This document shows, in pieces, positions 17,251 through 34,940 of a DNA stretch of 64,000 nt. A program made the translations under genes and the position numbers. Positions within the stretch are counted from its first letter, which is position 1. Each line of letters starts with the position of its first letter. The stretch lies in IMG/VR virus record IMGVR_UViG_3300034117_002447, positions 62,001 to 126,000 of that record, one strand, 5' to 3'. Below the pieces are notes generated by a model. That model did not search any database. It had not been told where the DNA came from and saw only the letters and a program-made list of their open reading frames with translations.

Positions 17251-17290
17251 CTGTGTATTTAGACCTGTAACTCTGGGAGTCACTGGGCCT

Positions 17291-17320: not shown

Positions 17321-17328
17321 TTTTTTGT

Positions 17329-17404
17329 TGGTGGTGAGGGGCGGGATCGAACCGCCGACACCAGGATTTTCAGTCCTGTGCTCTACCATCTGAGCTACCT
17401 CACC
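17329..17404 (-). tRNA. tRNA-Phe(GAA), first gene of the array
   Basis: CAGGA-CTGAAAA-TCCTG; CCA. Confidence 0.97.
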
Positions 17405-20015: not shown

Positions 20016-20103
20016 TGGCGGAGGATGTAGGATTCGAACCTACGGTACCTTGCGGTACAACAGTTTTCAAGACTGCCGCGATCGACCACTCTGCCAATCC
20101 TCC
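20016..20103 (-). tRNA. tRNA-Ser(TGA)
   Basis: GCAGT-CTTGAAA-ACTGT; long variable arm; G73; CCA. Confidence 0.97.
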
Positions 20104-20109: not shown

Positions 20110-20373
20110 TTACTTAGACTCGATTATATTATACGTACCTTCCATTACGCCATAACTCGATTCTTCATGGAACTGATAGGTTTGAGCAACATCACTTGAA
20201 TCCATCGGCCGAGTCAAATACCAGATTTGAGTCTCTTTCCACGTTACAGTTACCAATTTTCTGCCCTTTGGTAAATTGATAGTGCCTTCACCGCCGAAGT
20301 TTTTAACTCGCGAGTTTTCAGTACATGAAGCGAATGAGAATAGGATCGCTGTTAAAATTACTAATTTTTTCAT
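20110..20373 (-). CDS. Putative lipoprotein
   Basis: Signal peptide ending FASC. Confidence 0.7.
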   Translation of the reverse strand: MKKLVILTAILFSFASCTENSRVKNFGGEGTINLPKGRKLVTVTWKETQIWYLTRPMDSSDVAQTYQFHEESSYGVMEGTYNIIESK

Positions 20374-20381
20374 ATTGATTT

Positions 20382-20600
20382 TTATTTTAGAAAAAAGGAA
20401 AACGTTTCCTTAATGATTGTGATATTTACTTCATGCATGATTAACCATTTAATCCAAGCGAATGGCATGAAAAAGAAGTCCATGATCGCCCAAAAAATGC
20501 TATTGTGAATCTGATAACCGATCATCGCAGTTAGCAGTGCAAAGATTGAATAAATTCCAGGATTCCAAACAACTCGTGGTTTATTAGTTTCTATTTCCAT
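20382..20600 (-). CDS. Small membrane protein
   Basis: Two hydrophobic segments. Confidence 0.6.
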   Translation of the reverse strand: MEIETNKPRVVWNPGIYSIFALLTAMIGYQIHNSIFWAIMDFFFMPFAWIKWLIMHEVNITIIKETFSFFLK

Positions 20601-21920: not shown

Positions 21921-22094
21921 TTACTTTACAGTAACTGTGTCAACTAGAGTTGAGTCAGTGGTTACTGAAGTTGAGTCAACTAGAGTTGAGTCAGCAACAG
22001 TAACAGTAGAGTCAGCTGGAGCAGAGTTAGAACAGCTAGTGATAGCGATCATTGCAACTAGTGCAAAAGCGAAAAGCAAAATTGATTTCTTCAT
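21921..22094 (-). CDS. Small lipoprotein (57 aa) with DST repeats, not in ORF track
   Basis: MKKSILLFAFALVAMIAITSC-SNSAPADSTVTVADSTLVDSTSVTTDSTLVDTVTVK; own promoter (22130-22158) and downstream hairpin. Confidence 0.75.
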   Translation of the reverse strand: MKKSILLFAFALVAMIAITSCSNSAPADSTVTVADSTLVDSTSVTTDSTLVDTVTVK

Positions 22095-22135: not shown

Positions 22136-22537
22136 CTAAGAATTTGTGCAGAGTTTCCGAATAAGCCATCTTCTGGCCTCAAGTTGATCGCGATATCCTC
22201 TCTTATTACACGTTATCTCGTATGGATGTTTTTCGTAACTTGTTCGGTATTCTCCGTATTTTTCCATGTCCTGTTTGAAATGGGTGTATTCATGGATTAC
22301 TGTGCTGCACCAAGAAAGTAACGACCTGTGTCTTTTTGGATTTAAAATGATTGTGTTTTGACAAGGTTCATACATTCCGAAATGTATATGGTTCGGATCA
22401 ATCTGAATCTTCAACGTTTTGAGATTGTTGTACTTACTTGGGCCATACTTTTCAATACACCATCCCAAAAGAAGATTCGCACTCTTCTTATTAATGTATT
22501 CTCTCACGGTAAGGTTATTTATCATAGTTTTAAGCAT
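22136..22537 (-). CDS. HEXXH zinc-metallopeptidase-like protein
   Basis: VIHEYTHFKQ...PYE. Confidence 0.65.
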   Translation of the reverse strand: MLKTMINNLTVREYINKKSANLLLGWCIEKYGPSKYNNLKTLKIQIDPNHIHFGMYEPCQNTIILNPKRHRSLLSWCSTVIHEYTHFKQDMEKYGEYRTSYEKHPYEITCNKRGYRDQLEARRWLIRKLCTNS

Positions 22538-22578: not shown

Positions 22579-23181
22579 ATGAATTACACAAAAGAAATGA
22601 TCGAGGCTGCAGTTAAGGCAAAGGGTTATGCTTGGTTCGAAGGGGCCAAAGACTATGACCTAAATCTAGTTGGGGTTAGAAATAACTCAGCGGCAATCGC
22701 AGATAAAGTTACTAATCTATTTGACGATTGGATGACTGCTTCTTATAAAGTTAACGGCGTATGGCAATTTAACTGCTGGCCAATAACTACTGATCCGGGT
22801 AAGAAAGCTATGCTTGAATATCACAATCCAAATGGAGTTGCTCGAGTAGTTCCAGGACAATATCGTGGAATGTGGGCGATTGGATTACACCAGGGCAAAT
22901 ACGAAGCACTAAGACAGGTTAAGCCAGTTAAAGTTTATCGTGATAAAAACAAAGACATGAAGTATGACGAAACAACAATTCAAGAAGGAATCTTTGGAAT
23001 TAACGGTCACCGCTCTAACCCAAAAACTCAATCTGAATACGTTGAAAACTGGTCCGAAGGTTGTCAAGTATTTAAAAAGGTTGCAGACTTTAATGCCTTA
23101 ATGAAACTTGCAAATCTAGCTAAAGCAATCCACGGAAATTCATTCACTTACACTCTATTGGAATCAACTGATATTGTTTAA
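22579..23181 (+). CDS. Putative cell-wall enzyme, YkuD/L,D-transpeptidase-like
   Basis: GINGHRS...WSEGCQV (H-x-S-x-GC pattern); beside the endolysin. Confidence 0.55.
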   Translation: MNYTKEMIEAAVKAKGYAWFEGAKDYDLNLVGVRNNSAAIADKVTNLFDDWMTASYKVNGVWQFNCWPITTDPGKKAMLEYHNPNGVARVVPGQYRGMWAIGLHQGKYEALRQVKPVKVYRDKNKDMKYDETTIQEGIFGINGHRSNPKTQSEYVENWSEGCQVFKKVADFNALMKLANLAKAIHGNSFTYTLLESTDIV

Positions 23182-23201: not shown

Positions 23202-23229
23202 AACCCCCAGCTTAAACTGGGGGTTTTTT
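23202..23229 (+). terminator. Intrinsic terminator
   Basis: AACCCCCAG-CTTAAA-CTGGGGGTT-TTTT. Confidence 0.85.
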
Positions 23230-23281: not shown

Positions 23282-24106
23282 ATGCTATTAAAGAATGGAT
23301 CTAATGGCCCAGAGGTTGCCAAAATGCAAGCACTCCTAGGAGTAGGCGCAGATGGAAGCTTCGGACCTGGAACAGAAACCGCTGTCAAAGCATGGCAGCA
23401 AGCAAACGGGCTTACTCCTGACGGTATCGTCGGAGATGCTACTTGGGCTAAGATGTTTGGTGCAGCTCCAGTTGCAGCTCCAGCAGCTACGCCAATCCCA
23501 CCATCAAGTTTTAAACTTGAAAAACTAGCTGGACATGTACCAGCAGCAGTAATCGCTCAAATTCCTGACACAGCTGCAAAATTCGGAATCACTAATCCTT
23601 TAAGATTAGCTCACTTCCTTGCGCAATGTGGACACGAAAGTGGAGGATTCAAAGCAGTTAACGAGAATCTAAACTATTCAGCTGACGGTCTTAAAAAGAT
23701 CTTCGGAAAGTATTTTCCTGGTAACTTAAACGAGTCTTATGCTCGTCAACCTGAAAAAATCGCTGCTAGAGTGTATGCTTCTAGAATGGGTAATGGAGAT
23801 GAAGCTTCGAAAGAAGGTTTTAAATTCAGAGGTCGCGGTTACATTCAATTGACTGGTAAATCGAATTACACAAACTTTGCAAAATTTATCGGCGAGGATA
23901 CTGTTGCTAATCCGGATCTAGTCGCTACAAAATACCCACTCGCATCGGCTGCTTTCTTTTTTCAGTCTAATGGCTTATGGGCGATTTGTGATAAAGGAGC
24001 AGACACTGCTGCTGTAACTGCGGTAACTAAGAGAGTTAATGGTGGAACGATTGGTTTGGCTGACCGTATTAAACACTTTAACGAGTATTACGCTTTATTA
24101 AAATAA
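23282..24106 (+). CDS. Endolysin: peptidoglycan-binding domain + GH19 catalytic domain
   Basis: DGSFGPGTETAVKAWQ...DGIVG; HFLAQCGHESGGF, ENLNYS, FRGRGYIQLTGK, TKRVNGG. Confidence 0.92.
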   Translation: MLLKNGSNGPEVAKMQALLGVGADGSFGPGTETAVKAWQQANGLTPDGIVGDATWAKMFGAAPVAAPAATPIPPSSFKLEKLAGHVPAAVIAQIPDTAAKFGITNPLRLAHFLAQCGHESGGFKAVNENLNYSADGLKKIFGKYFPGNLNESYARQPEKIAARVYASRMGNGDEASKEGFKFRGRGYIQLTGKSNYTNFAKFIGEDTVANPDLVATKYPLASAAFFFQSNGLWAICDKGADTAAVTAVTKRVNGGTIGLADRIKHFNEYYALLK

Positions 24107-24124: not shown

Positions 24125-26047
24125 ATGAAAAAAATAATCTTTATTCTATTCGCACTAGTCACGTGCGCACTCTCTACTGGAGTTTATGCTCAAAGTGGAC
24201 CTCCTGCCCCAGGCGCAGGAATTTGGACAATCATTGATACGACATATCAAGTTGGTACAAGTACGCTAGGTCAGTCCAAAGCCAGAATCACGCTAAAGAA
24301 TGCAACTATCTCAAAATACACAGGTATTCAAACTCGAATATTTTACGATAAGGATGCATTTGCTAGTGCATCAGTTGCGCTAGTTGGATCGCCTACTAAC
24401 TTATATTTACAGTCAGTAGATAGTAATGCTACCGGTTACGTAACCCTTTCATTAGTGTATACTGGAAACAGCAGTACTTATACTCTAGCGGACGGTGAAA
24501 CCTTTGAAATAACCTTTACTCACGTTGCAGCTGCATCGTTTTATGCGTTACCCTCAATCAGTGCTCTTACGTTTAGTGGCGCAGCTTCTTTTACTACACT
24601 CGCTGCATCTCAGACAGGTTTAGATACTACTCTAAGCAAGCATAGCTACGGCGGTGTATGGGAACAGCCTACTTTAGACTTCCATGGTAAATTTACAAAC
24701 GTTACTGGAACTGGAGCAAAGAACTTAACTTTAGCTCTTGAGAAAAAGGTAAAAGCTGGAGGTACTTGGGGAACTCATGATACGTACGTAACTGACCTAA
24801 GTGGAAATTTTGCATTTAGCGAAATTATTGATACTACTTATTATGATGTACGCCTTGCAATTAAAGGTGATACGATGACGGTAGGAAACGTTATATCAAC
24901 AGCAGATGCTCAATTAATTAATCAATGGGTGTTAGGGTCAGCGACTCCTTCCGGATTCGACTTCTATACAGCAGATGTTAACGGTTCAACTAACGTAACA
25001 ATAACTGATGCATACGGAGTATTTGGTAGAATTGCTGGAAGATTCACTGAATGGCCTAATGCCGTTGAGGATGTTAAGTTCTTTACTGCTGCCCAATACA
25101 CAACAATCACAGGATCTCCATCGACTAACTATACTTCAACTTATGCTGGAGTAACAAACTTCTACTACGACATTTTACCAGGACAACCTGATTCAGTTCA
25201 ATATTACGTACTTGTTCCAGGAGATGCAAACGGTACGGGTTACAACATGGCTCGTTTAACGCCAATTGAAGTAATGATCAATCCACCGGCTGGAACCCCA
25301 GCTCAAACTGAAAACGTAATTGATATGACAGTTGAATACGATTTTCCAACGAGCTCAATTGAAGTTAATCTTCCTAATCTTTCTGTAAATTCAGGAAATC
25401 TAGTAGAAATACCGGTTACTGTTAAAACTGGAGGAAAGGATATTTCGTCTCTTCAATTAGCAATGTTATACGATCAGACCTTATTGGAATTTAAAGACAT
25501 TACTAACTCTGCTAAATCAATGCAGTGGATGTCTTCATTCAATCCAACTGGCGGAATTATCGAATGGGCCGGTTACGATCCATCAGCTAACAAAAGCTAC
25601 ATGATTCCAGATAATTATGAAGTTTTTAAATTGAGATTTATCGCACTTAAACCTCAAATTGATTGGGAGGCATCGCCTTTGTATACTTCTAGAAAATTCT
25701 CAGGAGACAATCAATCTAGGGATTTATCAATCACCGCAGCAAACGGCATCTTAATCGTTGCTAAAATGGCTGGACCTTCTGGTCAATTGGATAACTTTGA
25801 AATTACCGCATTTCCCAATCCAACTACTGGAGAGATAAGCTTTGACTTCTCAGTTAAGAATAGCGGAATGGTTAAGTTAGTAATCGTTGACCTAAACGGA
25901 TCAGAACAATTTGTTATACTTGATCAAGACATGCCAGCTGGAAAATACGTATACTCTTCCAATATTAATCAGTTAACTAGCGGATTATACGTTGCTTCTT
26001 TACAGGCAGTTGATCAAATTAACTCTACTAAAATCATAAAAAAATAA
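24125..26047 (+). CDS. Secreted protein with dockerin-like repeat, cohesin-like domain and T9SS type A C-terminal sorting domain
   Basis: Signal peptide; ADVNGSTNVTITDA; LVEIPVTV...SLQLAMLYD; FPNPTTG...SGLYV...KIIKK. Confidence 0.75.
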   Translation: MKKIIFILFALVTCALSTGVYAQSGPPAPGAGIWTIIDTTYQVGTSTLGQSKARITLKNATISKYTGIQTRIFYDKDAFASASVALVGSPTNLYLQSVDSNATGYVTLSLVYTGNSSTYTLADGETFEITFTHVAAASFYALPSISALTFSGAASFTTLAASQTGLDTTLSKHSYGGVWEQPTLDFHGKFTNVTGTGAKNLTLALEKKVKAGGTWGTHDTYVTDLSGNFAFSEIIDTTYYDVRLAIKGDTMTVGNVISTADAQLINQWVLGSATPSGFDFYTADVNGSTNVTITDAYGVFGRIAGRFTEWPNAVEDVKFFTAAQYTTITGSPSTNYTSTYAGVTNFYYDILPGQPDSVQYYVLVPGDANGTGYNMARLTPIEVMINPPAGTPAQTENVIDMTVEYDFPTSSIEVNLPNLSVNSGNLVEIPVTVKTGGKDISSLQLAMLYDQTLLEFKDITNSAKSMQWMSSFNPTGGIIEWAGYDPSANKSYMIPDNYEVFKLRFIALKPQIDWEASPLYTSRKFSGDNQSRDLSITAANGILIVAKMAGPSGQLDNFEITAFPNPTTGEISFDFSVKNSGMVKLVIVDLNGSEQFVILDQDMPAGKYVYSSNINQLTSGLYVASLQAVDQINSTKIIKK

Positions 26048-26054
26048 ACAAACA

Positions 26055-26396
26055 ATGTCTGAGGAAACAAACGCAGCAGAAACAAATGATGGAACATGGT
26101 CAGGTCTTAAGAAGACCCTGATCGGTACGATCTCTACGGCAGTTTTAGCTGGAGGTACATGGCTTACAACTACTCTATTTAACGGAGGTGACCATGAAAA
26201 AGAAGAAACGAAAACTGAACAGGTTGCACCAGCAGCTCAACCAGTTATCAACGTTAATCTTGAAAACAATAATACAAATCAACAAAAACAATCAGGCGGA
26301 ACTAACACAGTAATCCGTGAGAGAGTTGTTGAGAAAGCTCCAGCTGAAAAACCAGCGGAAAAGAAGAAGAGCGAGTCTGAAGACGCTCCTTGGTAA
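26055..26396 (+). CDS. Hypothetical membrane-anchored protein
   Basis: One TM helix, charged tail. Confidence 0.65.
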   Translation: MSEETNAAETNDGTWSGLKKTLIGTISTAVLAGGTWLTTTLFNGGDHEKEETKTEQVAPAAQPVINVNLENNNTNQQKQSGGTNTVIRERVVEKAPAEKPAEKKKSESEDAPW

Positions 26397-26457
26397 TCAG
26401 AAGGCGGATTAACGTCCGCCTTTTTATTTTCAGAACTAAAAATAAACTACTACTACA

Positions 26458-26820
26458 ATGTCTAATTTGAAAAAATTATTAATCGGTGAATCTGCATACG
26501 TAAAGGTTGAAGACAAGAATCGCTTCTACTACATGCTACAACAAATGCAGTCAAACCGTTGGAAAATTACAGGAATCGTTCTATTTCTTTTCTTCTTTAT
26601 TATTGCTGGAATTAATTCAGCTGTATTTTTTGGAGTAACAATCGCAGAAGATTGGAAAGAATTACTACTTCTTTTATTGGGAGCCTTTGTTGGTAACCTA
26701 AATAAAGTAGTTGACTACTGGTTCAATTCAGAAGATCGTGATAAAATGTTAATTCAAAAGGTTGACGAAGAAGATGGAGTATCTCTTTCTAATACTACTT
26801 CAAATAACGTAACCGAATAA
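26458..26820 (+). CDS. Two-TM membrane protein (holin-like)
   Basis: Two TM helices ending VVDYWF. Confidence 0.55.
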   Translation: MSNLKKLLIGESAYVKVEDKNRFYYMLQQMQSNRWKITGIVLFLFFFIIAGINSAVFFGVTIAEDWKELLLLLLGAFVGNLNKVVDYWFNSEDRDKMLIQKVDEEDGVSLSNTTSNNVTE

Positions 26821-26822
26821 TC

Positions 26823-27542
26823 ATGAAGAGATTAGCACTTATCTTAATAATGCTTTTCTCAGTAAGCTTATGTATTGCTCAGCCTGGTTCAATCAAGACT
26901 GAGCAGTACCGAGCTTCTTTTGAAAAGAAGATGTCAATTGACTCTGTTCCGGAATATACTGACACAATTAAAATTCCTATTCAATTATTAAAGATTGGAA
27001 TTAATGAGGAGCTTTACGAAATGTATCCTGAGTTAAAGGATAAACGGGTTGGTCTTGGTGTAACAAATATTGTATTGGAATATTTGGAATACACAAACCG
27101 TTTTGTATTTACTGAAGACAAACTTGAAATTAAAGAGAGAATGATTAGTCAATTTAAAGCGTCTGATAAAGGATTCACTGAGAATAAACTAGACGGCCGT
27201 GGTAAAATCAAGTTAGCAAAATACTTTGTCTATATTGAAGTTTACGATTTCTCTGTATCAGAAGATGAAGTCGTTAGAATAAACGGCGAGTCTAAAACAA
27301 CTCAAACAACTCGACTGGGTTTACAGGTAAAATTCGTTGATGCTGAGACTGGAGAAGTTCTAGTTGGTTCAGGATTAGGCGAAGCTTCCACTATTAAAAC
27401 CGTTTCTATTTTAGATGGAGTGGACGATAGTGAAATTAAATTTAACCAATCTACCATTGGTATTACAACTAAAAAGGCGTTAGAGACAGCATCGTCTAGG
27501 ATAGTGGTGAGAATGATTAAGAAGAATATCTTCAAAAATTAA
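26823..27542 (+). CDS. CsgG/HfaB-like exported protein
   Basis: Signal peptide; TNRFVFTE, AKYFVYIEVYDF, LQVKFVDAETGEV. Confidence 0.65.
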   Translation: MKRLALILIMLFSVSLCIAQPGSIKTEQYRASFEKKMSIDSVPEYTDTIKIPIQLLKIGINEELYEMYPELKDKRVGLGVTNIVLEYLEYTNRFVFTEDKLEIKERMISQFKASDKGFTENKLDGRGKIKLAKYFVYIEVYDFSVSEDEVVRINGESKTTQTTRLGLQVKFVDAETGEVLVGSGLGEASTIKTVSILDGVDDSEIKFNQSTIGITTKKALETASSRIVVRMIKKNIFKN

Positions 27543-27556
27543 AATATGAAACGCAA

Positions 27557-29227
27557 ATGTATGTTAAAAAAATTATACTGCTTATTGCGTGGATCTTAGT
27601 ATCGTCATTGGGAATGGCTCAAACCTTTTCCTACAATTACACTGATCCATGTACTGGAATAAACAAAACAATACAAGTTCCATCAAACGGAATAACAGTA
27701 ACCTATTACGGTCAAGTAAATACATTTCAACCAACGGATTTTTACAATGGAGGTTTTGAGACATGGGCTCAAGGCGTTTATTCTTCCTTTGGTAATAACA
27801 ACCCATGTGCAAGTTTAGTAGGAATGCCTACTTCAGTTAATATAGCACAAAATACAGCAATTAGTTTTCTAGGAATAGTAAACTCATTATCGGCTCTATC
27901 TGATATGGCTGGCGGATCAAGTAATATGATTGGCGGAACTGTCTCTAGTGTACAAAATTCCTCCAAGTCAAAGGGTAACTCCAAAAATAAAGGCGGGGCG
28001 GATAAACCTGCAGAAAATAGTACTTCAACAAATGCACAATCTAATGGAAGTACTGGTGGTAGCTCTAACTCTGGGACCACTAGTAACAATGGGAGCTCTA
28101 CTAGCAGTAGTGGATCTTCTACGACACAGGGCTCACAGACTCAAGGTTCGAACGAAACTGGCTCGACAAGCAGCGGAGGATCTGGAGAACCAGGATCAAC
28201 TGCCGGTAACGGAACAGCTGGGTCTCAAGCTGGCAATGGAACCTCTGGGTCTCAAGCAGGTGGATCAACCACTGGAAGCGGTTCAACGACCGGCTCAACT
28301 ACCGGAAGCGGTTCAACGACCGGCTCAACTACCGGAAGCGGATCAACAACCGGCAACGGAACTACCGGATCTCAAGCTAGCGGATCAACTTCAAATAGCG
28401 GCAATGTTAATGGAGGCGGGTCTGGAACGACCGCTGGCTCTGGAACAAGCGGCTCAAATAATCAGTCAACGCCAACTTCTGAAACAGAAGCAGGTGGAAA
28501 AACTAACTTAATTGGCGGATCAGTTGGTTCAGTACAGGAATCAACTTCCGCAGGTGGAGGAGCAGCCGGTGCCTCTAATAAAAATGGGAATCGACCTAGT
28601 ATTTTAGCAAGCAGCGATTTCGTTGGATTCAATTTTAAAAATTCAGATGTTACAGTTGGAGGAAAGGTCACTGGAGGTTACTCATCAATGAGATGGGACG
28701 GAAAGAGATCTCACGGAATTAGTGCAGACTATACGACTGCTATAAAGGGTCCAAATATTACAGGCTTTTATGCATTCATGAATAAGCGAAGAATAGATTT
28801 AATCTCTACATCGCTTACTATTGGTTTTGAAAGACAAATGACTGTCTATGGAACATTAGCAGTAGGTCAAATGTGGACTCTAAATAAGCCGAAAAACCTA
28901 AAAGCTCTTTATATGCTAACCGGTTCAGTCGGCCAAGTATCAGGGACTGCTTTTATAGGAACTGCTGCTATTGCTGGAGGAATGTATGACTGGAAAATCT
29001 CTAAGAGAATTTCAGTAAAAATGTTATGTTTGTACGTGTATGCCCCATACGTTAGTTACTATAATGATGTTCTATTAAAATCACCACATGTGGTTTTACC
29101 TATTATGGGAACTAATATCGGGATAACTAAACGATTTAAGCTTAACATAAACGCCGGTGGAGCTTGGGCGATTAATGAATCCACATTAAACTATACCATC
29201 ATGCTGGGAACTCGCATGCTATTATGA
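27557..29227 (+). CDS. Exported protein with Gly/Ser/Thr-rich linker and C-terminal beta-barrel-like region
   Basis: Signal peptide; GSTTGSG repeats; alternating beta strands at C-terminus. Confidence 0.65.
   Translation: MYVKKIILLIAWILVSSLGMAQTFSYNYTDPCTGINKTIQVPSNGITVTYYGQVNTFQPTDFYNGGFETWAQGVYSSFGNNNPCASLVGMPTSVNIAQNTAISFLGIVNSLSALSDMAGGSSNMIGGTVSSVQNSSKSKGNSKNKGGADKPAENSTSTNAQSNGSTGGSSNSGTTSNNGSSTSSSGSSTTQGSQTQGSNETGSTSSGGSGEPGSTAGNGTAGSQAGNGTSGSQAGGSTTGSGSTTGSTTGSGSTTGSTTGSGSTTGNGTTGSQASGSTSNSGNVNGGGSGTTAGSGTSGSNNQSTPTSETEAGGKTNLIGGSVGSVQESTSAGGGAAGASNKNGNRPSILASSDFVGFNFKNSDVTVGGKVTGGYSSMRWDGKRSHGISADYTTAIKGPNITGFYAFMNKRRIDLISTSLTIGFERQMTVYGTLAVGQMWTLNKPKNLKALYMLTGSVGQVSGTAFIGTAAIAGGMYDWKISKRISVKMLCLYVYAPYVSYYNDVLLKSPHVVLPIMGTNIGITKRFKLNINAGGAWAINESTLNYTIMLGTRMLL
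28261..28352 (+). repeat. Coding 30-nt tandem repeat (GSTTGSGSTT)
   Basis: GGCTCAACTACCGGAAGCGGTTCAACGACC-type units, about three copies. Confidence 0.8.
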
Positions 29228-30402
29228 GAAAGTTTATCATCACACTAATTGCTACATTGATTATAGGGTCGGTGTATGCTCAACCATTTACTTATTCAGG
29301 ATATGTTTATGGAGCTAATGGTCAAGGCTTACAAAATATACCAGTCTTGCTATACGGCAAAAGGATTGTTCAATATGAAGTAACTTTTCCTACTTATCCG
29401 ACTTCTCCTAGTTATACAACCGGTACCGTAATTCCATCATCGGACGATGCTACACATGGACCATTTAATATAGGATTTAGTTTTACCTACTTTGGAAATA
29501 CGTATACTCAATTTTACGTTGGATCAAATGGATGGATCGGGTTTAGCTCGGGCCAAACAACTGGATATACTGCAGCCTTTATTCCAAATGCAGGGTCTCC
29601 ATTAAACGCAATTTTAGCGGATTGGGAGGACTTATTTCCTGGATCAGCTAACATCAGATACGTAACATCAGGAACATCGCCCAATAGATCGTTGACTGTC
29701 TCTTTTAATGCAGTTCCGCATTATGGGTGTAGAACAAATCTACACACATTTCAGTTCATTCTATATGAAACGTCGAATTTAATAGATATAAATTATGCCT
29801 CAAAACCTTTATGTGGTAGTAATAACGCGACCGCCGGTCTAATATCAACTTCTTCGTCAACGGTTGTTCCAGTCGGTGGAAAGAATGCATCTCAATGGAG
29901 CGCAACTAATTATTCAGTTAGATTTACACCAGCTTCACCGGAAACTACATTCAGCATAAAGGGAACATATTACACTAATTCGTTGGGTCTATATTCAATG
30001 GTACCTAATTTAGATGACGCGTCCCATGATTTCCAAATTAGATTAGAAAATCTGACTATTAGTAATCCAATATCAACTGCTGCTCAATACCCTATTCAAA
30101 TGTTATTATACTCGGTGATGCCAAGCTCTAAATTGTATTATACAATGGACGTTAATCAAGATACTCGGTTTAATGTAACGGATTCCTATTGCATATTCGG
30201 TAAAATTTCAGGTAGATTTCCAAATTGGATAAATGCATATCCGTCGTATCGGATATTTACGCCAGCTCAATGGACAACTATTAATTCCGGGACAAGTGAT
30301 CTACGCTCCAGTATACCAGGAGTTCAATCAATGATTATTTCAACACCAACTAATGGAGGAACTACTAGCTTTTATCTGTTACGGACTGGCTATACACAAT
30401 AA
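29224..30402 (+). CDS. Exported protein with dockerin-like repeat (partial paralog of 24125..26047)
   Basis: DVNQDTRFNVTDSYCIFGKISGRF vs DVNGSTNVTITDAYGVFGRIAGRF. Confidence 0.65.
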   Translation: MRKFIITLIATLIIGSVYAQPFTYSGYVYGANGQGLQNIPVLLYGKRIVQYEVTFPTYPTSPSYTTGTVIPSSDDATHGPFNIGFSFTYFGNTYTQFYVGSNGWIGFSSGQTTGYTAAFIPNAGSPLNAILADWEDLFPGSANIRYVTSGTSPNRSLTVSFNAVPHYGCRTNLHTFQFILYETSNLIDINYASKPLCGSNNATAGLISTSSSTVVPVGGKNASQWSATNYSVRFTPASPETTFSIKGTYYTNSLGLYSMVPNLDDASHDFQIRLENLTISNPISTAAQYPIQMLLYSVMPSSKLYYTMDVNQDTRFNVTDSYCIFGKISGRFPNWINAYPSYRIFTPAQWTTINSGTSDLRSSIPGVQSMIISTPTNGGTTSFYLLRTGYTQ

Positions 30403-30422
30403 ATAAAAAAAACAAATTAAAT

Positions 30423-30704
30423 ATGGCAGAAGAAACAAACCCTACTTCAGGATTTACGGATACCTTCTTTTCTAAACTAAAAGAACAATCATTTACCATC
30501 GTACTTATGATAGCGGTTATTTGGTATCAAGGCGTGATGATGGAAGAGCGTGTAGCGTATTGGCAAAAACTATATGAAGCACAAAAAGCCTATACTGAGC
30601 AAACAGTAAAGGATGATAAACAAATTATGCTCGATCGAATACAATACTTACAAGACCAACGTGATAAATACGTTGAGGATGCAATAATTGAACTAAAAAA
30701 ATAA
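30423..30704 (+). CDS. TM + coiled-coil hypothetical protein
   Basis: Hydrophobic segment then heptads. Confidence 0.6.
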   Translation: MAEETNPTSGFTDTFFSKLKEQSFTIVLMIAVIWYQGVMMEERVAYWQKLYEAQKAYTEQTVKDDKQIMLDRIQYLQDQRDKYVEDAIIELKK

Positions 30705-30717
30705 TAAATTTTATAAG

Positions 30718-31191
30718 ATGAAGAAGTTTATTTTATTGCTTGCAGTTTTACTATTGGTACAGCTGCTGGCTTTTTCGCAAACTAGCCCAATTCACATGTG
30801 TATTAAAATAGACACAGTATATTCTACCGCAAAGGTTAGGGAATTAGGAAACCGTGATATTCGGTTTGGTGTAAAGCAAATAGCAGAAGACCTACTTTCT
30901 TCTAAATACTGTCTATCTGATGCAGGATCCCCAATTAAGATTGAGATCTATTATTTCGGTATTCCTAAAAGTACCATACGTATTGCTGGAATAGAAAAGA
31001 CTGAGCAGGTTACACAAGTCGCTGTTCGAATTTATTATAACGGGCAAAAGTACGAAGGGACTGGCGAGTCTGAGACTGAGGTGAGAGCCGTAATGATTGA
31101 ATTGGAAGAGGGTGCTATGCCGTTTTCTAAAATGACAGTATCTAATTCTATCAAAAAAGCACTTGAACAATGTATTTTAAAAATGCCTTAA
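30718..31191 (+). CDS. Exported hypothetical protein (possibly CsgG-related)
   Basis: Signal peptide; GTGESETE...IKKALE resembles the C-terminal half of 26823..27542. Confidence 0.55.
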   Translation: MKKFILLLAVLLLVQLLAFSQTSPIHMCIKIDTVYSTAKVRELGNRDIRFGVKQIAEDLLSSKYCLSDAGSPIKIEIYYFGIPKSTIRIAGIEKTEQVTQVAVRIYYNGQKYEGTGESETEVRAVMIELEEGAMPFSKMTVSNSIKKALEQCILKMP

Positions 31192-31637
31192 TTGTATTAA
31201 TATTAACGATTCCAGTATTTGGATTTTCTCAAATAGTAATAGACGATGTCGGAGACGGCTGGAAGGCTAGAGTCGAGAGGGCTATTTTACTTGTAAAAGA
31301 TACTGACTCAGTTAGTTACCAAACTCTGATTACGAATTGTAAACGAATTGAGTTTATAATGGGCGATAGATCTACTAACCTTCCACCCAATACTATTGTG
31401 ATTAATACAAAGGACGTAACTAGTCCGTCTATTAATAATTTAGCGGCCGTATTGGTGCATGAGTCGTATCACCTGTACTTATGGAATAACTTGATTAAGT
31501 TTACAGCAAGAGAAGAGGAGCTCATGTGTTACATGCATGAATATAATTTTTTATGTAAGTTAACTGATGTCGAGGACTGGTTATTCCTAAATGCAGTTAA
31601 CCAAATAATACAGTTAAAAAATACACGTAACAAATAA
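31170..31637 (+). CDS. Exported HEXXH metallopeptidase-like protein
   Basis: LVHESYH...EE. Confidence 0.6.
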   Translation: MYFKNALIVLILTIPVFGFSQIVIDDVGDGWKARVERAILLVKDTDSVSYQTLITNCKRIEFIMGDRSTNLPPNTIVINTKDVTSPSINNLAAVLVHESYHLYLWNNLIKFTAREEELMCYMHEYNFLCKLTDVEDWLFLNAVNQIIQLKNTRNK

Positions 31638-32380
31638 TGAAGTTTATATTAACGATACTATTACTGACAGTCTCATTACCTGTATTTAGTCAAATTAAAA
31701 AATCAATATCGGTTGGAGGAGATGGAACTAGGGGAAACTTTAGTGCAATTGGTATTACAACGAAAGCTGAATTAAAAAGAGATACTGGATCGTATCAATG
31801 GAATCTAAATACTACTTACCGTTGGAGCAAGCAATCCGCGTATGGAAAATCTGAAATGACTCAGTACGAAAATGAAGTCTACTTGACTGGAAATATTTCA
31901 AAACAGATAGGTAAGTTTAAAGTTATTGGATTTACTGAAGATGAGAGATCATACATGAGAAAAATAGATCTTCGAAGCTCAGCTGGTTTGGGATTAGGCG
32001 TATCAATTATCAAGAATAAGAAGTTCGATATTGTTTTCTCTGAAGTAATTTTGCCAGAGTATTTTTGGTCCAGCATTAAGGTTTCAAATAATAACTTTAC
32101 AGTAAGAGCATCATCTAGACTTAGAGCAAATTACGAAAGCGGATTGATTAAGATCTCGTCAGTTACTCTATTTCAGCCAGCAATTTATTCAAGCAGAGAA
32201 GTTTCTTTTCTAGATAATTTAAACATGCGAAGTACAAACACAATCGCACTTAAGATTAAAAAGAATTTAGAAATAGGATTAGTTTATACGTATAGCTATC
32301 AAGGTTACCCTCATTACATAACAGACTCAGTTAATCCTTCTCAGGAAACTGCGTCAGTTCTTTTAAAGTATATCTTTTAA
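31637..32380 (+). CDS. Outer-membrane beta-barrel (DUF481-like)
   Basis: Signal peptide, beta-strand periodicity, AGLGLG, terminal YIF. Confidence 0.65.
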   Translation: MKFILTILLLTVSLPVFSQIKKSISVGGDGTRGNFSAIGITTKAELKRDTGSYQWNLNTTYRWSKQSAYGKSEMTQYENEVYLTGNISKQIGKFKVIGFTEDERSYMRKIDLRSSAGLGLGVSIIKNKKFDIVFSEVILPEYFWSSIKVSNNNFTVRASSRLRANYESGLIKISSVTLFQPAIYSSREVSFLDNLNMRSTNTIALKIKKNLEIGLVYTYSYQGYPHYITDSVNPSQETASVLLKYIF

Positions 32381-32558: not shown

Positions 32559-33014
32559 TTATTTGTTTTTATTTTTACGAGTTGACATTTCGTCTGGATC
32601 AAGTAGAGCTCTGCCGAATTCCTTAACTCGATCAGTGTATCTAACTTTGACTCCTTCGCTAATTGCTAGGGAATTACCCTCATCGTCAATCCGAACGAAT
32701 TTTATATTTGTGTGAGTAACTACTGTTTGAACTCCAGTGTAAACATTATGCTTACGAACTTCAATGTATAGAGTAACTGAAGTTGTTCCAAACGCCTTTA
32801 CTGATCCGTATATTTTTATAATATTACCGACCTTTACTGGCTTTGAAAAAACCAGCTCGTCAATTTTTAGGGTTACTACTCGTTGGGTGTCGCATATTTG
32901 AGATGCATAACTTGCAGCAGCATCGTCAATAATAGAAAGGATAATTCCACCAAACATATTATTGTGGACACCAATATCTCCTTGCTTGCAAATGTATGTA
33001 CTAATTAATTCCAT
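32559..33014 (-). CDS. Acyl-CoA thioesterase (hotdog fold, YciA-like)
   Basis: NMFGG...IDDAA, FSKPVKVG, FVRID. Confidence 0.85.
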   Translation of the reverse strand: MELISTYICKQGDIGVHNNMFGGIILSIIDDAAASYASQICDTQRVVTLKIDELVFSKPVKVGNIIKIYGSVKAFGTTSVTLYIEVRKHNVYTGVQTVVTHTNIKFVRIDDEGNSLAISEGVKVRYTDRVKEFGRALLDPDEMSTRKNKNK

Positions 33015-33556
33015 TCTTCTTCGATTCGACTGTCGTCAGGTTTTGAATAAACTATTTTATGAGCAGCGACTTCATGCCGATTACCATTAAATAAGTCAAC
33101 GTATTTCTTGCCGGTTCCAGGCTTTAGGTACCCGATTGTTGCATGTGGATGGTAGTCTGGGAAATCAGTAGTGTGAGGTAACTTACTAAGTTCTGCATTA
33201 ATCTCAGCCAACACTGGATTTTCTACATCAAACTTAAGTACATCGTATTTAGCATTCTCAAATAGAGATGCATTATGTAGAGTCAGTTGACCGATTGGTT
33301 TAGATTTACATATCTCTAATACCTTAGCGTCATTAATATCTGCCGAATGAAGTCCATATAAAAGAGTTGTATGAGGTTCATCCTCAAGACCGTATGAACG
33401 ATCGCCCTCTTCTGTGTAGATATCTGCTTCATCTATTTTTGAATGCAGTTCAGGCATTGTTGGAAAATTGAAATAGACCATTGCACATCCATAACTATGA
33501 GCGTCTCCTTTCTTTTCAAATAATCCAGTTACGAATTGGCTAAATGATTTTAACAT
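33005..33556 (-). CDS. 2H phosphoesterase, T4 gp57B/Acb1-like
   Basis: Two HxT motifs PHTTLLYG and PHATIGY; capsid-targeting-like N-terminus. Confidence 0.75.
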   Translation of the reverse strand: MLKSFSQFVTGLFEKKGDAHSYGCAMVYFNFPTMPELHSKIDEADIYTEEGDRSYGLEDEPHTTLLYGLHSADINDAKVLEICKSKPIGQLTLHNASLFENAKYDVLKFDVENPVLAEINAELSKLPHTTDFPDYHPHATIGYLKPGTGKKYVDLFNGNRHEVAAHKIVYSKPDDSRIEEEWN

Positions 33557-33578: not shown

Positions 33579-34940
33579 TTACTTTGAAGAATACTTTAGG
33601 TTTTTCTTTAGCTCAAATAAATCTTCTCGATACATCTCAGTTGGATCCTTCTTTTTAATATCGACTAATAGCGATTTAATATCAGCAACTTCTTTCAATA
33701 ATTGCTCGTAAGTTTCTTTAGTCAGAGAGTGGATTGGCATGTTGAGTAAGTAGTTATACGATCCATTAACTTCGTCGAAGTCTGCCGTTTGCAGGTAGAG
33801 AATGATCTCTTTACGTGGAACGTTATTTACTTTAAGTTTACCATCAATAATAAGCTTAATGAATTTAGCTCGGTTCGATAAGTAAATTAATTCTTCACCG
33901 TACTTCTTGATTAAGAATGCTTTGCGTTTATCATAGAAACTTAATCTAAAGTTTACAAAGTAATCTACCACTTGAGTAATGTCCTCAAAGATTGCAAGCT
34001 TGCCCTTTTCATTTAAGCAGGTTAAGTTCTCAGTTTCAGTCTCAATCATCTTAAGGGTTTGGTCGAGCCGGCCTTTTCCAATTAGGTCAGCTAGTGTAGC
34101 TCTTGCAAATTTAAGAGTGTAGTTGATTCCATTTGAAGAATTGTCATCGTACGAAACAATAATTCCTCTATCTTGTAGAGTATTCAAATGAACTTCGTAT
34201 TTCTGAAAAGTCATTGATGGCGGAAGCTCTGTAATCTTGACAGTAGTAGTATTCAGAACTTCGTATACTCCACGCATAATGTACTGGTTAGTTCCAACGA
34301 CTGACTCGACTGGGCCAATGTAGTCTCTCCACCATGGAAGCAGTTTGCCTATTTTCTTGCCATCTAATACTTTAAGACATGAGTCTACTAAGTCTAATGG
34401 ATTACGATTTAATATGTTAGTGGCAAATCCTACTGCAATACCTGAGCTTCCGTTTAGTAGAACGGTTGGGATAATTGGCAAGAAGAATTTAGGTTCAATC
34501 GTATTTCCTTCTTCGACTTGATTCTCAAGCAATTCAAAATCCTTGTAAAGAAGTCTAAAATTTCCAGTAAGTTTAGTTGAAATATAACGAGCCGCACCAG
34601 CTTCAGGAGATCTTAGAGATCCGAACTGGCCTATCTCGTCAAGAAGAGGTAATGAATTCTTAAATGACTGAGCCATCCCAATGATTGCACCATTTAGAGA
34701 CCCGTCACCGTGATGGTAGTGGGCATCTGCTGCGATCTTACCACCTAACTGGAATATCTTTAATGGCTTTTCATTGCCTGATTTCCAGACTTTATCTGAG
34801 ATATAAATGATTTTACGCTGAGTAGGTTTGAAACCATCTATTACAGAAGGAATTGCCCGGTTTTCTAACGTGTACATTCCGTACATCGCATAGTCCTGAT
34901 CTAAGTATTCAGTTACTGTTTTATTCTTTACGTGTGTCAT
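33579..34940 (-). CDS. DNA topoisomerase II medium subunit (T4 gp52/GyrA-like)
   Basis: RAIPSVIDGFKPTQRK, YHHGDGS, catalytic AARY, NGSSGIAVGFAT. Confidence 0.95.
   Translation of the reverse strand: MTHVKNKTVTEYLDQDYAMYGMYTLENRAIPSVIDGFKPTQRKIIYISDKVWKSGNEKPLKIFQLGGKIAADAHYHHGDGSLNGAIIGMAQSFKNSLPLLDEIGQFGSLRSPEAGAARYISTKLTGNFRLLYKDFELLENQVEEGNTIEPKFFLPIIPTVLLNGSSGIAVGFATNILNRNPLDLVDSCLKVLDGKKIGKLLPWWRDYIGPVESVVGTNQYIMRGVYEVLNTTTVKITELPPSMTFQKYEVHLNTLQDRGIIVSYDDNSSNGINYTLKFARATLADLIGKGRLDQTLKMIETETENLTCLNEKGKLAIFEDITQVVDYFVNFRLSFYDKRKAFLIKKYGEELIYLSNRAKFIKLIIDGKLKVNNVPRKEIILYLQTADFDEVNGSYNYLLNMPIHSLTKETYEQLLKEVADIKSLLVDIKKKDPTEMYREDLFELKKNLKYSSK

What the first reader, a model, noticed from the sequence alone, without database searches (positions are those of the whole stretch)
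24125..32380. Phage-encoded outer-membrane/secretion island: T9SS cargo, cohesin-dockerin-like pair, CsgG-like and beta-barrel proteins
SEEN: ten co-oriented + strand genes behind the endolysin, most with Sec signal peptides. They include a T9SS-tagged protein with dockerin- and cohesin-like parts, a second dockerin-like protein, one or two CsgG-like proteins, a G/S/T-stalk protein, a DUF481-like barrel, a HEXXH protein and small TM proteins. KNOWN: T9SS is Bacteroidota-specific and CsgG-family proteins form outer-membrane pores or lipoprotein rings. INFERRED: a surface complex built in the infected cell for superinfection exclusion, adhesion or non-canonical outer-membrane lysis; I see no obvious spanins.
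Basis: partly seen in the sequence, partly recalled or inferred. Interest (0 to 1): 0.68.

Follow-up and report, generated by a model that had tools for sequence, protein, structure and literature searches.

The report
Phage module of exported envelope proteins
A 270-kb phage of Flavobacterium-like bacteria carries a strictly conserved block of genes whose products are exported into the host's cell envelope, most likely to rebuild the infected cell's surface; what that surface does is untested.

Summary
At 24125-32380 ten co-oriented genes follow a GH19 endolysin. Seven have Sec signal peptides that cleave before Gln, the Bacteroidota Q-rule.

- **G1:** a cohesin domain plus a type-A T9SS sorting domain, both above Pfam cut-offs.
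- **G4:** a divergent CsgG/HfaB-family protein (profile match 100%, fold Z 11.4). G8 is its short paralogue.
- **G5:** an autotransporter-like protein with an N-domain, a 183-aa S/G/T/N stalk and a C-terminal barrel.
- **G6:** shares a dockerin-like domain with G1. Its relatives carry swappable lectin heads.
- **G9 and G10:** G9 keeps an invariant HExxH. G10 is DUF481.

G1, G2, G4, G5, G6 and G8 are present and colinear in 45 of 45 non-identical related phage loci, while the flanks vary. A cultured relative, Flavobacterium phage immuto, has the same core. The module lies in the non-structural arm, so these are not virion proteins.

G4-G5-G8 mirrors a chromosomal three-gene cassette of other bacteria. 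G4 was not found in 300 sampled Bacteroidota genomes.

The best reading is an infected-cell surface complex that displays variable lectins. Adhesion, receptor masking and outer-membrane lysis remain unresolved. This is a new variant of phage-encoded envelope clusters, as in the pelagimyophage CsgF/CsgG cluster.

The parts
22579..23181 (+). p200: first gene of the + strand block; a second cell-wall-enzyme-like protein with no signal peptide
   Evidence: phrog_3000 E 5.8e-38 and phrog_33083 'endolysin' E 4.5e-14. No Pfam or PDB sequence hit. Present in 18 of 45 related loci, on either side of the module.
23282..24106 (+). Endolysin: peptidoglycan-binding domain plus GH19 lysozyme-like domain; no signal or membrane segment
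   Evidence: PG_binding_1 E 1.9e-14, Glyco_hydro_19 E 5.5e-9. Within 10 kb of the module in 33 of 45 loci, in either orientation.
24125..26047 (+). G1, 640 aa, core gene. Layout: signal peptide (1-22, VYA|Q); beta-sandwich (about 30-150); second beta-sandwich (170-250); helical dockerin-like part (256-330); cohesin (412-530); type-A T9SS sorting domain (563-640)
   Evidence: Pfam and NCBIfam. In 34 relatives: Por_Secre_tail 34/34, Cohesin 32/34, Dockerin_1 14/34. AF2 mean pLDDT 76, with Foldseek matches to cohesin modules 2w1n, 4fl4 and 3l8q. It is the only T9SS tail in the 270-kb genome.
26055..26396 (+). G2, 113 aa, core gene. One Gly-rich membrane helix (about 20-42), then an acidic and Pro/Ala/Lys-rich tail ending in an invariant Trp (DAPW or EESW)
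   Evidence: Alignment A7 of 33 relatives. Present in 45 of 45 loci. A terminator-like hairpin at 26399-26424 follows it.
26458..26820 (+). G3, 120 aa, accessory. Two membrane helices and an acidic C-terminus (holin-like topology only)
   Evidence: Alignment A8 of 21 sequences, 66% mean column identity. Present in 26 of 45 loci. Elsewhere the same slot holds a non-homologous ~95-aa two-TM protein (e.g. L010:9694-9990) or nothing. No family hit beyond phrog_38564 at E 0.0014.
26823..27542 (+). G4, 239 aa, core gene and the most conserved. Divergent CsgG/HfaB-family protein; here cleaved by signal peptidase I (CIA|Q), not lipidated
   Evidence: hhalign against bacterial PF03783-bearing proteins: probability 100%, E 3.5e-48. 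AF2 model versus CsgG: Foldseek E 1.3e-8, VIA Z 11.4 over 170 residues. 6366 related protein clusters. A lipobox is present in part of the relatives.
27557..29227 (+). G5, 556 aa, core gene. Layout: signal peptide; two-Cys N-domain (22-121); 183-aa S/G/T/N stalk (136-318) flanked by a repeated 13-aa motif; C-terminal beta-barrel (346-556)
   Evidence: The ESM Atlas model of residues 346-556 matches Autotransporter (PF03797) clusters at TM 0.80-0.83. Composition and motif. 1082 unnamed related clusters with no Pfam.
29224..30402 (+). G6, 392 aa, core gene. Layout: signal peptide; variable head (here possibly NIDO-like, a lead only); conserved C-terminal dockerin-like domain (242-353)
   Evidence: 40% identity with G1 214-328, E 3e-19. 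Relatives carry Lectin_C, Laminin_G_3, Pentaxin, GEVED or Ig_7 heads. Consensus loop DVNNDGKITISD. Heads differ between loci whose G4 is 94-98% identical. NIDO lead.
30423..30704 (+). G7, 93 aa, rare accessory. One membrane helix then a charged helical tail
   Evidence: Detected in 1 of 45 non-identical loci. Weak phrog_9316 'holin' hit at E 0.0069.
30718..31191 (+). G8, 157 aa, core gene. Short paralogue of G4 with a signal peptide (AFS|Q)
   Evidence: hhalign A1 versus A2: 96.8%, E 2.3e-10. The third gene of the bacterial cassette matches the G8 profile at 93.5%. Present in 45 of 45 loci.
31170..31637 (+). G9, 155 aa, frequent accessory. Small exported zincin-like protein with HESYH at 31458-31472
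   Evidence: H97, E98, H101, E116 and E117 are invariant in 36 sequences. Only weak family hits: SprT-like in 13 of 36, best E 6e-4. Present in 37 of 45 loci.
31637..32380 (+). G10, 247 aa, accessory. DUF481 outer-membrane barrel ending in ...KYIF
   Evidence: PF04338 E 1.8e-8, 35.1 bits against a cut-off of 21.1. Present in 12 of 45 loci, at varying positions.

Best explanation
The block is a phage-encoded envelope-remodelling module made during infection of a Flavobacterium-like host.

Shown:
- Its proteins carry Bacteroidota-type Sec signal peptides.
- G1 carries a type-A T9SS sorting domain.
- G4 and G8 belong to the CsgG/HfaB family of outer-membrane secretion and anchor proteins.
- G5 ends in a barrel with an autotransporter-like fold.
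- G6 relatives carry interchangeable lectin heads on a conserved dockerin-like tail.
- Six genes are always present and always in the same order.

Inferred:
- G4, G5 and G8, a cassette with a chromosomal counterpart in other bacteria, form an outer-membrane platform. G5 holds a domain on a long flexible S/G/T stalk.
- G1 is sent to the surface through the host T9SS as a scaffold.
- G6 lectins dock on G1 through the only cohesin and dockerin-like parts that the phage has.
- G2 ties the platform to the inner membrane through its periplasmic tail.
- The result is an infected cell coated with strain-matched lectins. These would hold it to glycans of particles or neighbouring host cells, or cover its own surface glycans.
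For: Export signals: signal peptides with cleavage before Gln occur in G1, G4, G5, G6, G8, G9 and G10, and in most relatives. The Q-rule is specific to Bacteroidetes (PMC5837995).

Domain evidence: T9SS tail and cohesin are above cut-off and conserved in 34/34 and 32/34 relatives. G4 is CsgG/HfaB by profile and fold, and G8 is its paralogue. The G5 barrel is autotransporter-like.

Lectin heads: G6 heads are Lectin_C, Laminin_G_3, Pentaxin and GEVED, and are swapped between near-identical phages.

Conservation: core genes are 45/45 present and colinear with changing flanks. A cultured Flavobacterium phage has the same core among replication genes.

Self-contained parts: the phage genome has one T9SS tail and only two dockerin-like domains. 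The only cohesin in three MAGs carrying the phage contig is the phage's own.

Bacterial counterpart: a chromosomal cassette, CsgG-like / unknown / CsgG-like.
Against: - No binding, localisation or expression data exist. No RNA run was listed.
- G6 has no known route across the outer membrane, so the lectins might act in the periplasm.
- The dockerin-like parts of this window's G1 and G6 are degenerate and below Pfam's threshold.
- The G5 barrel call rests on a low-confidence predicted model (whole-protein pLDDT 0.50). The middle protein of the bacterial cassette is not demonstrably homologous to G5.
- Two wall-degrading enzymes recur next to the module, which would also fit a role in lysis.
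Confidence: 0.4

Rival explanations
1. Superinfection exclusion or receptor masking. The same surface complex exists, but its lectins bind the infected cell's own surface glycans or gliding adhesins. Competing phages, and the phage's own progeny, then cannot adsorb to the cell or its debris.
For: - Fast turnover of G6 heads between phages whose G4 is 94-98% identical is what an arms race over surface glycans would give.
- Exported proteins encoded in the non-structural arm are typical of exclusion genes (established knowledge of T4 Imm/Sp and T5 Llp).
- Flavobacterium phage resistance commonly maps to gliding and T9SS surface genes (PMC9804748).
Against: - Known exclusion systems are one or two small genes and are patchy among relatives. 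Here six genes are invariant in 45 of 45 loci.
- Nothing links G6 specificity to the phage's own receptor-binding proteins. This was not tested.
Confidence: 0.22
2. Outer-membrane step of lysis. With no recognisable spanins, the phage uses G2 (inner membrane, periplasm-spanning tail), the G4/G8 outer-membrane proteins and the G5/G10 barrels, together with a holin-like G3, to breach or destabilise the outer membrane after the endolysin acts.
For: - The module is co-oriented with two wall enzymes, and these stay within 10 kb in 33 of 45 loci despite rearrangement.
- The G2-G4 slot holds alternative non-homologous two-TM proteins, as holin slots often do.
- G4 relatives in part carry a lipobox, like outer-membrane spanins.
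- G2 has inner-membrane-spanin-like topology and an invariant C-terminal residue.
- The + strand block lies among - strand early-type genes.
Against: - The G4/middle/G8 cassette is chromosomal in free-living bacteria, where it cannot be for lysis.
- Lectin heads, a cohesin scaffold and T9SS export have no role in membrane rupture.
- In phage immuto the endolysin is 8 kb away and the module sits with replication genes.
- G2's tail is low-complexity, not coiled-coil.
- The holin-like gene is absent from the slot in many loci.
Confidence: 0.18
3. An outer-membrane channel for transport. G4 and G8 form a CsgG-like pore that exports an unfolded phage substrate, for example the S/G/T stalk of G5, or lets solutes in. 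This is analogous to the unexplained CsgF/CsgG cluster of pelagimyophages.
For: - CsgG/HfaB membership of G4.
- CsgG family members are secretion pores for unfolded substrates (established knowledge of curli and of Caulobacter HfaB).
- G5's 183-aa disordered stalk would fit such a pore.
- There is a phage precedent (PMC7029224).
Against: - No CsgA, CsgB, CsgE or CsgF relatives among the ten proteins.
- The window's G4 lacks the lipid anchor. G8 lacks about a third of the fold.
- Pore formation cannot be judged from a monomer model of mean pLDDT 68.
Confidence: 0.12
4. Ordinary virion proteins, such as fibres or decoration proteins with Ig-like and lectin domains.
For: Lectin, Ig-like and cohesin-like beta-sandwich domains also occur on phage capsids and fibres (general knowledge). 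G6 head swapping resembles receptor-binding-protein evolution.
Against: - Cleavable Sec signal peptides on seven proteins, conserved in relatives.
- A T9SS sorting tail, membrane barrels and an outer-membrane-lipoprotein family.
- Location among RNA ligase, topoisomerase, tRNA, thioredoxin and replication genes, not structural genes.
Confidence: 0.03

Closest known systems
Curli-related CsgF/CsgG cluster of pelagimyophages (SAR11 myophages; Zaragoza-Solas et al. 2020, PMC7029224)
   Same: A lytic aquatic myophage lineage carries a conserved cluster with a CsgG-family outer-membrane protein plus unknown exported proteins. It lies between the replication and structural genes. Its function is unknown, and adhesion ('sibling capture') has been proposed.
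   Different: No CsgF and no curlin-like partners here. The host phylum and secretion routes differ. This module adds a T9SS cargo with cohesin, lectin-headed dockerin-like proteins and an autotransporter-like barrel. Its CsgG-like proteins are a distant subfamily below Pfam detection.
CsgG/HfaB family outer-membrane lipoproteins (E. coli curli channel CsgG; Caulobacter holdfast anchor HfaB)
   Same: G4 matches bacterial PF03783 proteins at hhalign probability 100%. Its model superposes best on CsgG (Z 11.4). Some G4 relatives keep the lipobox.
   Different: The window's G4 is a signal-peptidase-I substrate without a lipid anchor. There is no direct Pfam hit. Nonameric pore, membrane hairpins and substrate are all untested.
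Chromosomal three-gene cassette CsgG-like / 296-424-aa protein / CsgG-like in KSB1, Rhodothermales, Calditrichota and unnamed metagenomic bacteria
   Same: Same gene order as G4-G5-G8, which are contiguous in phage immuto. The first and third genes are homologous to G4 and G8. The KSB1 middle protein has the same layout: signal peptide, domain, low-complexity linker, beta-rich end.
   Different: The bacterial copies are lipoproteins. Homology of the middle protein to G5 was not shown. The cassette itself has no known function and has no G1, G2 or G6 partners.
Cohesin-dockerin scaffolds (cellulosomes and the non-cellulosomal cohesin/dockerin proteins of Bacteroidota)
   Same: Cohesin domain above Pfam cut-off and by fold. 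Dockerin-type calcium loop DxNxDGxIxxxD on variable-headed partner proteins. Modular heads on a constant docking tail.
   Different: Only one canonical loop rather than the duplicated pair. The window's copies are degenerate. Heads are lectins, not enzymes. The scaffold itself also carries the dockerin-like part. Binding is unproven.
T9SS-secreted surface lectin adhesins of Flavobacterium, such as RemA (from my own knowledge of F. johnsoniae gliding)
   Same: A lectin function combined with a T9SS sorting domain that places it on the cell surface, where it can cause cell-cell and cell-glycan adhesion.
   Different: Here lectin (G6) and sorting domain (G1) are on separate, phage-encoded proteins. 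No sequence relation to RemA was tested.
Q-rule signal-peptide proteins of Porphyromonas gingivalis phages (Matrishin et al. 2023, PMC10367356)
   Same: Phages of Bacteroidota encode unknown proteins whose signal peptides expose N-terminal Gln. These were read as adaptation to the host's export system and potential to modify the outer membrane.
   Different: Those are single genes in temperate phages. That paper does not mention T9SS or a CTD (0 occurrences of the search terms).

Membership tests
T9SS type-A cargo (G1) | C-terminal sorting domain matching TIGR04183 / PF18962 above the curated cut-off | tested here: met
   PF18962 32 bits (cut-off 27); TIGR04183 31.6 bits (cut-off 23). Present in 34 of 34 relatives, best E 6.4e-14.
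T9SS type-A cargo (G1) | N-terminal Sec signal peptide for the first step of export | tested here: met
   Hydrophobic core at residues 4-22 with VYA|Q. 57 of 62 relatives score as signal peptide plus Gln.
T9SS type-A cargo (G1) | Secretion depends on the host T9SS, with tail removal by PorU | not testable with these tools
   Needs a T9SS mutant host. The cultured relative's host is a Flavobacterium, a genus known to have T9SS (my knowledge).
Cohesin (G1 residues 412-530) | Pfam Cohesin above cut-off and a cohesin-type beta-sandwich fold | tested here: met
   42.2 bits against 24.1. 32 of 34 relatives. Foldseek probability 1.00 to cohesin modules 2w1n, 4fl4, 3l8q and 3kcp.
Cohesin (G1 residues 412-530) | Binds a dockerin partner | not testable with these tools
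   Needs pull-down or calorimetry of G1 412-530 with the G6 and G1 dockerin-like parts.
Dockerin type I (G1 256-330; G6 242-353) | Pfam Dockerin_1 above the gathering score | tested here: not met
   G1 13.3 bits against 22.9. G6 has no hit. A G6 relative (L010) reaches 19.3 bits. 14 of 34 G1 relatives match at E <= 0.05, best 7.8e-5.
Dockerin type I (G1 256-330; G6 242-353) | Duplicated calcium-binding loop-helix (two DxNxDGxIxxxD segments) | tested here: not met
   One loop only. It is canonical in relatives (DVNNDGKITISD) and degenerate here: DVNGSTNVTITD in G1 and DVNQDTRFNVTD in G6.
CsgG/HfaB family (G4, G8) | Sequence membership (PF03783) | tested here: inconclusive
   No direct Pfam hit at E <= 0.1. 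However, the G4 profile matches a profile of PF03783-bearing bacterial proteins at probability 100%, E 3.5e-48 over 212 columns. G8 matches G4 at 96.8%.
CsgG/HfaB family (G4, G8) | CsgG fold | tested here: met
   Foldseek E 1.3e-8 to 6l7c. VIA Z 11.4, rmsd 5.5 over 170 residues, above PelC (9.2) and LptE/TolB-N (about 7.5). The model has mean pLDDT 68.
CsgG/HfaB family (G4, G8) | N-terminal lipid anchor (lipobox Cys) | tested here: not met
   In the window's G4, Cys17 is preceded by Leu and followed by IA|Q. Close relatives have no Cys. More distant relatives have LFSC-K or LIGC-K lipoboxes, and the bacterial relatives have an invariant Cys. G8 has none in 49 relatives.
CsgG/HfaB family (G4, G8) | Oligomeric outer-membrane pore built from membrane hairpins | not testable with these tools
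   The monomer model shows one long hairpin (strands 156-173 and 179-195). Nothing more can be said from it.
Curli (type VIII) secretion system | CsgA/CsgB amyloid subunits and the CsgE/CsgF accessory proteins alongside CsgG | tested here: not met
   No curlin, CsgE or CsgF family hit in any of the ten proteins at E <= 0.1.
Type Va autotransporter (G5) | C-terminal 12-stranded Autotransporter beta-domain (PF03797) | tested here: inconclusive
   No Pfam hit and no PDB sequence hit. The ESM Atlas model of 346-556 aligns to PF03797 clusters at TM 0.80-0.83, but also to KdgM porins at 0.76. Whole-protein pLDDT is 0.50.
Type Va autotransporter (G5) | Signal peptide, then an N-terminal passenger, then the barrel at the C-terminus | tested here: met
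   GMA|Q signal, two-Cys N-domain 22-121, stalk 136-318, barrel 346-556. The same order holds in relatives.
DUF481 outer-membrane barrel (G10) | PF04338 above cut-off | tested here: met
   35.1 bits against 21.1, covering 190 of 210 profile positions. Signal peptide VFS|Q and C-terminal ...KYIF.
Zincin metallopeptidase (G9) | HExxH with a downstream third ligand, conserved in relatives | tested here: met
   H97, E98, H101, E116 and E117 are invariant in 36 sequences.
Zincin metallopeptidase (G9) | Membership of a named peptidase family above cut-off | tested here: not met
   SprT-like 16.6 bits against 25.6; BSP 15.9 against 23.8. Scattered weak hits in relatives. No PDB sequence hit.
Holin / spanin lysis proteins (G2, G3, G7) | Match to a known holin or spanin family, or an inner-membrane coiled-coil protein paired with a small outer-membrane lipoprotein | tested here: not met
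   Only phrog_9316 'holin' at E 0.0069 for G7 and phrog_38564 (unknown function) at E 0.0014 for G3. Nothing for the alternative two-TM protein. G2's tail is low-complexity. Topology alone is holin- or spanin-like.

The most novel reading that the evidence does not exclude
A widespread lineage of freshwater and brackish Bacteroidota phages hijacks three host export routes at once (Sec with the Q-rule, barrel assembly, and T9SS). It uses them to assemble a self-contained cohesin-dockerin 'mini-cellulosome' of strain-specific lectins on the infected cell. This sits on a CsgG/HfaB-plus-barrel platform taken from a bacterial cassette. The infected cell is thereby turned into a sticky trap that captures neighbouring hosts or particles. 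It would be the first phage-encoded T9SS cargo system and the first functional cohesin-dockerin pair in a virus.
Probability: 0.2. Interest if true: 0.85.

Novelty: new variant of a known kind. Interest (0 to 1): 0.62.

Why it matters
Phages are known to alter the surface of the cells they infect, but mostly through one or two small genes. Here a six-gene core, up to ten genes, of exported proteins is invariant across a very abundant phage lineage. The counts are at least 254 IMG/VR contigs and 6366 protein clusters for G4 alone.

The module uses T9SS, a secretion system unique to the host phylum. It also couples a constant scaffold to fast-changing lectin heads.

If it mediates adhesion or exclusion, it would bear on several things:
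- how infections spread among particle-attached Flavobacteria in lakes and the Baltic;
- how competing phages are shut out;
- how infected cells should be counted in particle-attached versus free-living fractions.

It also gives a handle on an uncharacterised bacterial cassette (CsgG-like / unknown / CsgG-like). A cultured phage-host pair, immuto on Flavobacterium sp. LMO8, makes all of this testable.

Tried and rejected
- **Complex prediction.** G1 cohesin (residues 403-557) with the G6 C-terminal domain scored 0.01 against a mark of 0.32. The tool gives no verdict, and this is not evidence for or against binding.
- **RNA evidence.** No RNA sequencing run was listed for 24125-30100, so expression and transcript ends could not be examined and read laying was not used.
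- **DNA similarity.** Megablast of the region against deposited phages found no match.
- **G5 versus the bacterial middle protein.** BLASTP and hhalign gave nothing significant. Only position and layout agree.
- **PDB sequence searches.** Profiles of G4, G9, the G5 barrel and p200 gave nothing significant.
- **Promoters and terminators.** Sigma-70-type promoter scan: 31 found against 34 expected. Bacteroidota -33/-7 pattern: 5 found against 3 expected. T4-type late motif: none in the block. All were uninformative. Terminator counts were at chance (9 against 7.6), though two strong hairpins stand out.
- **Beta-strand scan of the G5 barrel.** A crude amphipathic scan found only five strong segments and does not decide the strand number.
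- **G6 head.** The Atlas feature search scored 0.82-0.83 with a NIDO-containing cluster. This is a lead only.
- **Rejected: recent capture of a host operon.** The G4 profile was found in none of 300 sampled Bacteroidota genomes apart from the MAG that holds a phage contig.
- **Rejected: virion proteins.** See the rival explanations.

Full report
**Setting.** The window is bases 174116-238115 of a 270,136-bp IMG/VR virus record rated 100% complete. It holds 20 tRNA genes. It also holds RNA ligase, PRPP synthase, topoisomerase II subunits, thioredoxin and a phosphoesterase. This is the non-structural arm of a jumbo phage. Between 22579 and 32380 twelve genes lie on the + strand, among - strand neighbours.

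The block opens with two wall-enzyme genes:
- p200 matches phrog_3000 at E 5.8e-38 and an endolysin PHROG at E 4.5e-14.
- The second gene is an endolysin with a peptidoglycan-binding and a GH19 domain.

- **G1** carries a Cohesin domain and a type-A T9SS sorting domain, both above curated cut-offs. Its Dockerin_1 hit is only weak.
- **G6** shares a 115-residue domain with G1 (40% identity, E 3e-19).
- **G10** is DUF481, above cut-off.
- **G9** has an invariant HExxH plus two Glu.
- **G2, G3 and G7** are small membrane proteins.

Seven proteins have signal peptides, and each is predicted to cleave just before Gln. That is the Bacteroidetes Q-rule (PMC5837995). The same holds in most relatives.

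**What the unknowns are.**

*G4 and G8.*
- G4 gave no Pfam hit.
- Its AlphaFold model (mean pLDDT 68) matches CsgG best: Foldseek E 1.3e-8 and VIA Z 11.4 over 170 residues. PelC scores 9.2 and LptE/TolB-N about 7.5.
- A 34%-identical relative in a KSB1 bacterium led to bacterial proteins that carry PF03783 and are named CsgG/HfaB family.
- The G4 profile matches their profile at probability 100%, E 3.5e-48.
- G8 is a shorter paralogue of G4 (96.8%).
- The window's G4 is not a lipoprotein. More distant phage relatives and all bacterial relatives keep a lipobox Cys.

*G5.*
- It has a two-Cys N-domain.
- A 183-residue stalk follows that is 81% S/G/T/N. The stalk is bracketed by a repeated 13-residue motif.
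- The C-terminal 210 residues, in the ESM Atlas model, align to Autotransporter beta-domains at TM 0.80-0.83.
- That model is of low confidence, and no sequence family is hit.

*G1.* Its model (pLDDT 76) is a string of beta-sandwiches with a helical dockerin-like insert. The order runs to a cohesin and then the sorting domain.

**Conservation.**
- G4 has relatives on 254 IMG/VR contigs and in 6366 protein clusters.
- In 45 non-identical loci with enough flanking DNA, G1, G2, G4, G5, G6 and G8 are present in all 45. They are colinear in all 45.
- The other genes are less constant: G9 in 37, the endolysin in 33, G3 in 26, G10 in 12 and G7 in 1. Flanking genes appear in 3 to 16.
- Where G3 is missing, the same slot holds an unrelated two-TM protein of about 95 residues, or nothing.
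- The cultured Flavobacterium phage vB_FspM_immuto (160 kb, Baltic) has the core as gp013-gp019. There G1 is split in two and G4-G5-G8 are contiguous. The module sits among helicase, ribonucleotide reductase and nuclease genes. The endolysin lies 8 kb away.
- Contigs of this phage lineage are binned with Flavobacterium and Sediminibacterium MAGs.

**Origin.**
- The G4 profile was not found in 300 sampled Bacteroidota genomes, other than the MAG holding a phage contig.
- In other bacteria a chromosomal cassette has the same order as G4-G5-G8. It reads CsgG-like, a 296-424-residue protein, then CsgG-like. It lies next to housekeeping genes.
- Its third gene matches the G8 profile at 93.5%.
- Its middle protein resembles G5 only in layout.

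**The variable part.**
- G6 relatives keep a signal peptide, an N-terminal beta-sandwich-like segment and the C-terminal domain. That domain has a canonical dockerin calcium loop, DVNNDGKITISD.
- Between these parts they carry C-type lectin, LamG/ConA-like, pentaxin, GEVED or Ig-like domains.
- Phages whose G4 is 94-98% identical differ by whole head domains. Examples are 359 against 569 residues and 540 against 322.
- The phage genome holds one T9SS tail, and the dockerin-like domain occurs only in G1 and G6.
- In three MAGs that carry the phage contig, the only cohesin is the phage's own. No Dockerin_1 match was found.

**Interpretation.**
- Secure: this is a conserved module of proteins exported to the periplasm, outer membrane and cell surface of a Bacteroidota host. 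It is not a set of virion proteins.
- Most likely (about 0.4): it builds a surface complex. G4, G5 and G8 would form an outer-membrane platform with a stalk. G1 would be a T9SS-delivered scaffold. G6 lectins would dock on G1. G2 would tie the platform to the inner membrane.
- Purpose: the lectin heads argue for glycan recognition. That means either adhesion of the infected cell to particles or to other hosts, or masking of its own receptors. Adhesion was proposed for the pelagimyophage CsgF/CsgG cluster (PMC7029224).
- The lysis reading keeps some weight. Two wall enzymes recur nearby, the slot for two-TM proteins behaves like a holin slot, and G2 has spanin-like topology.
- Against lysis: the bacterial cassette, the lectins and the T9SS scaffold do not fit membrane rupture.

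**Novelty.**
- Database annotation already calls some G4 relatives CsgG.
- The immuto record names a cohesin protein and a C-type lectin protein.
- Phage CsgG clusters and Q-rule phage proteins have been reported.
- Six literature searches found no description of this module, and none of a phage-encoded T9SS cargo. This absence covers only the library searched.
- I therefore rate it a new variant of a known kind.

Noticed in passing
window 22579-23181 (+): p200, just ahead of the GH19 endolysin, matches phrog_3000 (E 5.8e-38) and the C-terminal part of an 'endolysin' PHROG (E 4.5e-14). It has no Pfam or PDB sequence hit. The phage may therefore carry two wall-degrading enzymes side by side. 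In relatives p200 moves to either side of the module.
   Followed up: partly
window 20110-20600 (-) and 21921-22094 (-): Three small envelope-type genes lie just upstream on the other strand. They are a 72-aa membrane protein (20382-20600), an 87-aa lipoprotein-like protein (20110-20373; phrog_12728 E 5.7e-25) and a 57-aa lipoprotein-like protein with S/T/V/D repeats (21921-22094).
   Followed up: partly
window 34921-36063 (-): A SulP/sulfate-permease family membrane transporter (Pfam Sulfate_transp E 9.4e-40) is encoded in the phage next to topoisomerase II. This is an unusual auxiliary gene.
   Followed up: no
window 33005-33556 (-): A 2H-phosphoesterase-like protein with weak matches to 2_5_RNA_ligase2 and to the anti-CBASS protein Acb1 (E about 1.8e-5, just under cut-off). 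It is a possible counter-defence gene.
   Followed up: no
window 14446-17404, 462-542, 20016-20103 (-): An array of 18 tRNA genes plus two single ones (Leu, Ser), 20 in all, with three tRNA-Met-type genes.
   Followed up: no
window 27923-27961 and 28505-28543 (+): G5 carries the motif N[ML]IGG[TS]V[SG]SVQ[NE]S twice, at the two ends of its S/G/T/N stalk. No Bacteroidota O-glycosylation motif D[ST][AILVMT] occurs anywhere in G5.
   Followed up: partly
window 23202-23225 and 26399-26424 (+): Two strong terminator-like hairpins (9 and 11 base pairs, each followed by a T-run) lie after p200 and directly after G2. They could split the block into p200 / endolysin-G1-G2 / G3-G10 transcripts. The overall terminator count is at chance level.
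   Followed up: no
L010:9694-9990 (also L006, L016, L061 and others): In phages that lack G3, the slot between G2 and G4 holds an unrelated ~95-aa protein with two membrane helices and an acidic tail (MFMDDNDINEKS...). This is a non-orthologous replacement of the kind seen for holins. It has no family hit.
   Followed up: partly
L090:787-3591; L096:6001-8275: An uncharacterised bacterial chromosomal cassette: CsgG/HfaB-like lipoprotein, a 296-424-aa secreted protein, then a second CsgG-like lipoprotein. It occurs in KSB1 and in other metagenomic bacteria beside housekeeping genes. Relatives of its first gene are named from Rhodothermales and Calditrichota.
   Followed up: partly
window 22136-22537 (-): A 133-aa protein with HEYTH and a weak DUF6782 putative-metallopeptidase match (E 1.1e-4, below cut-off), transcribed divergently from p200. 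It is a second small HExxH protein near the module, besides G9.
   Followed up: no
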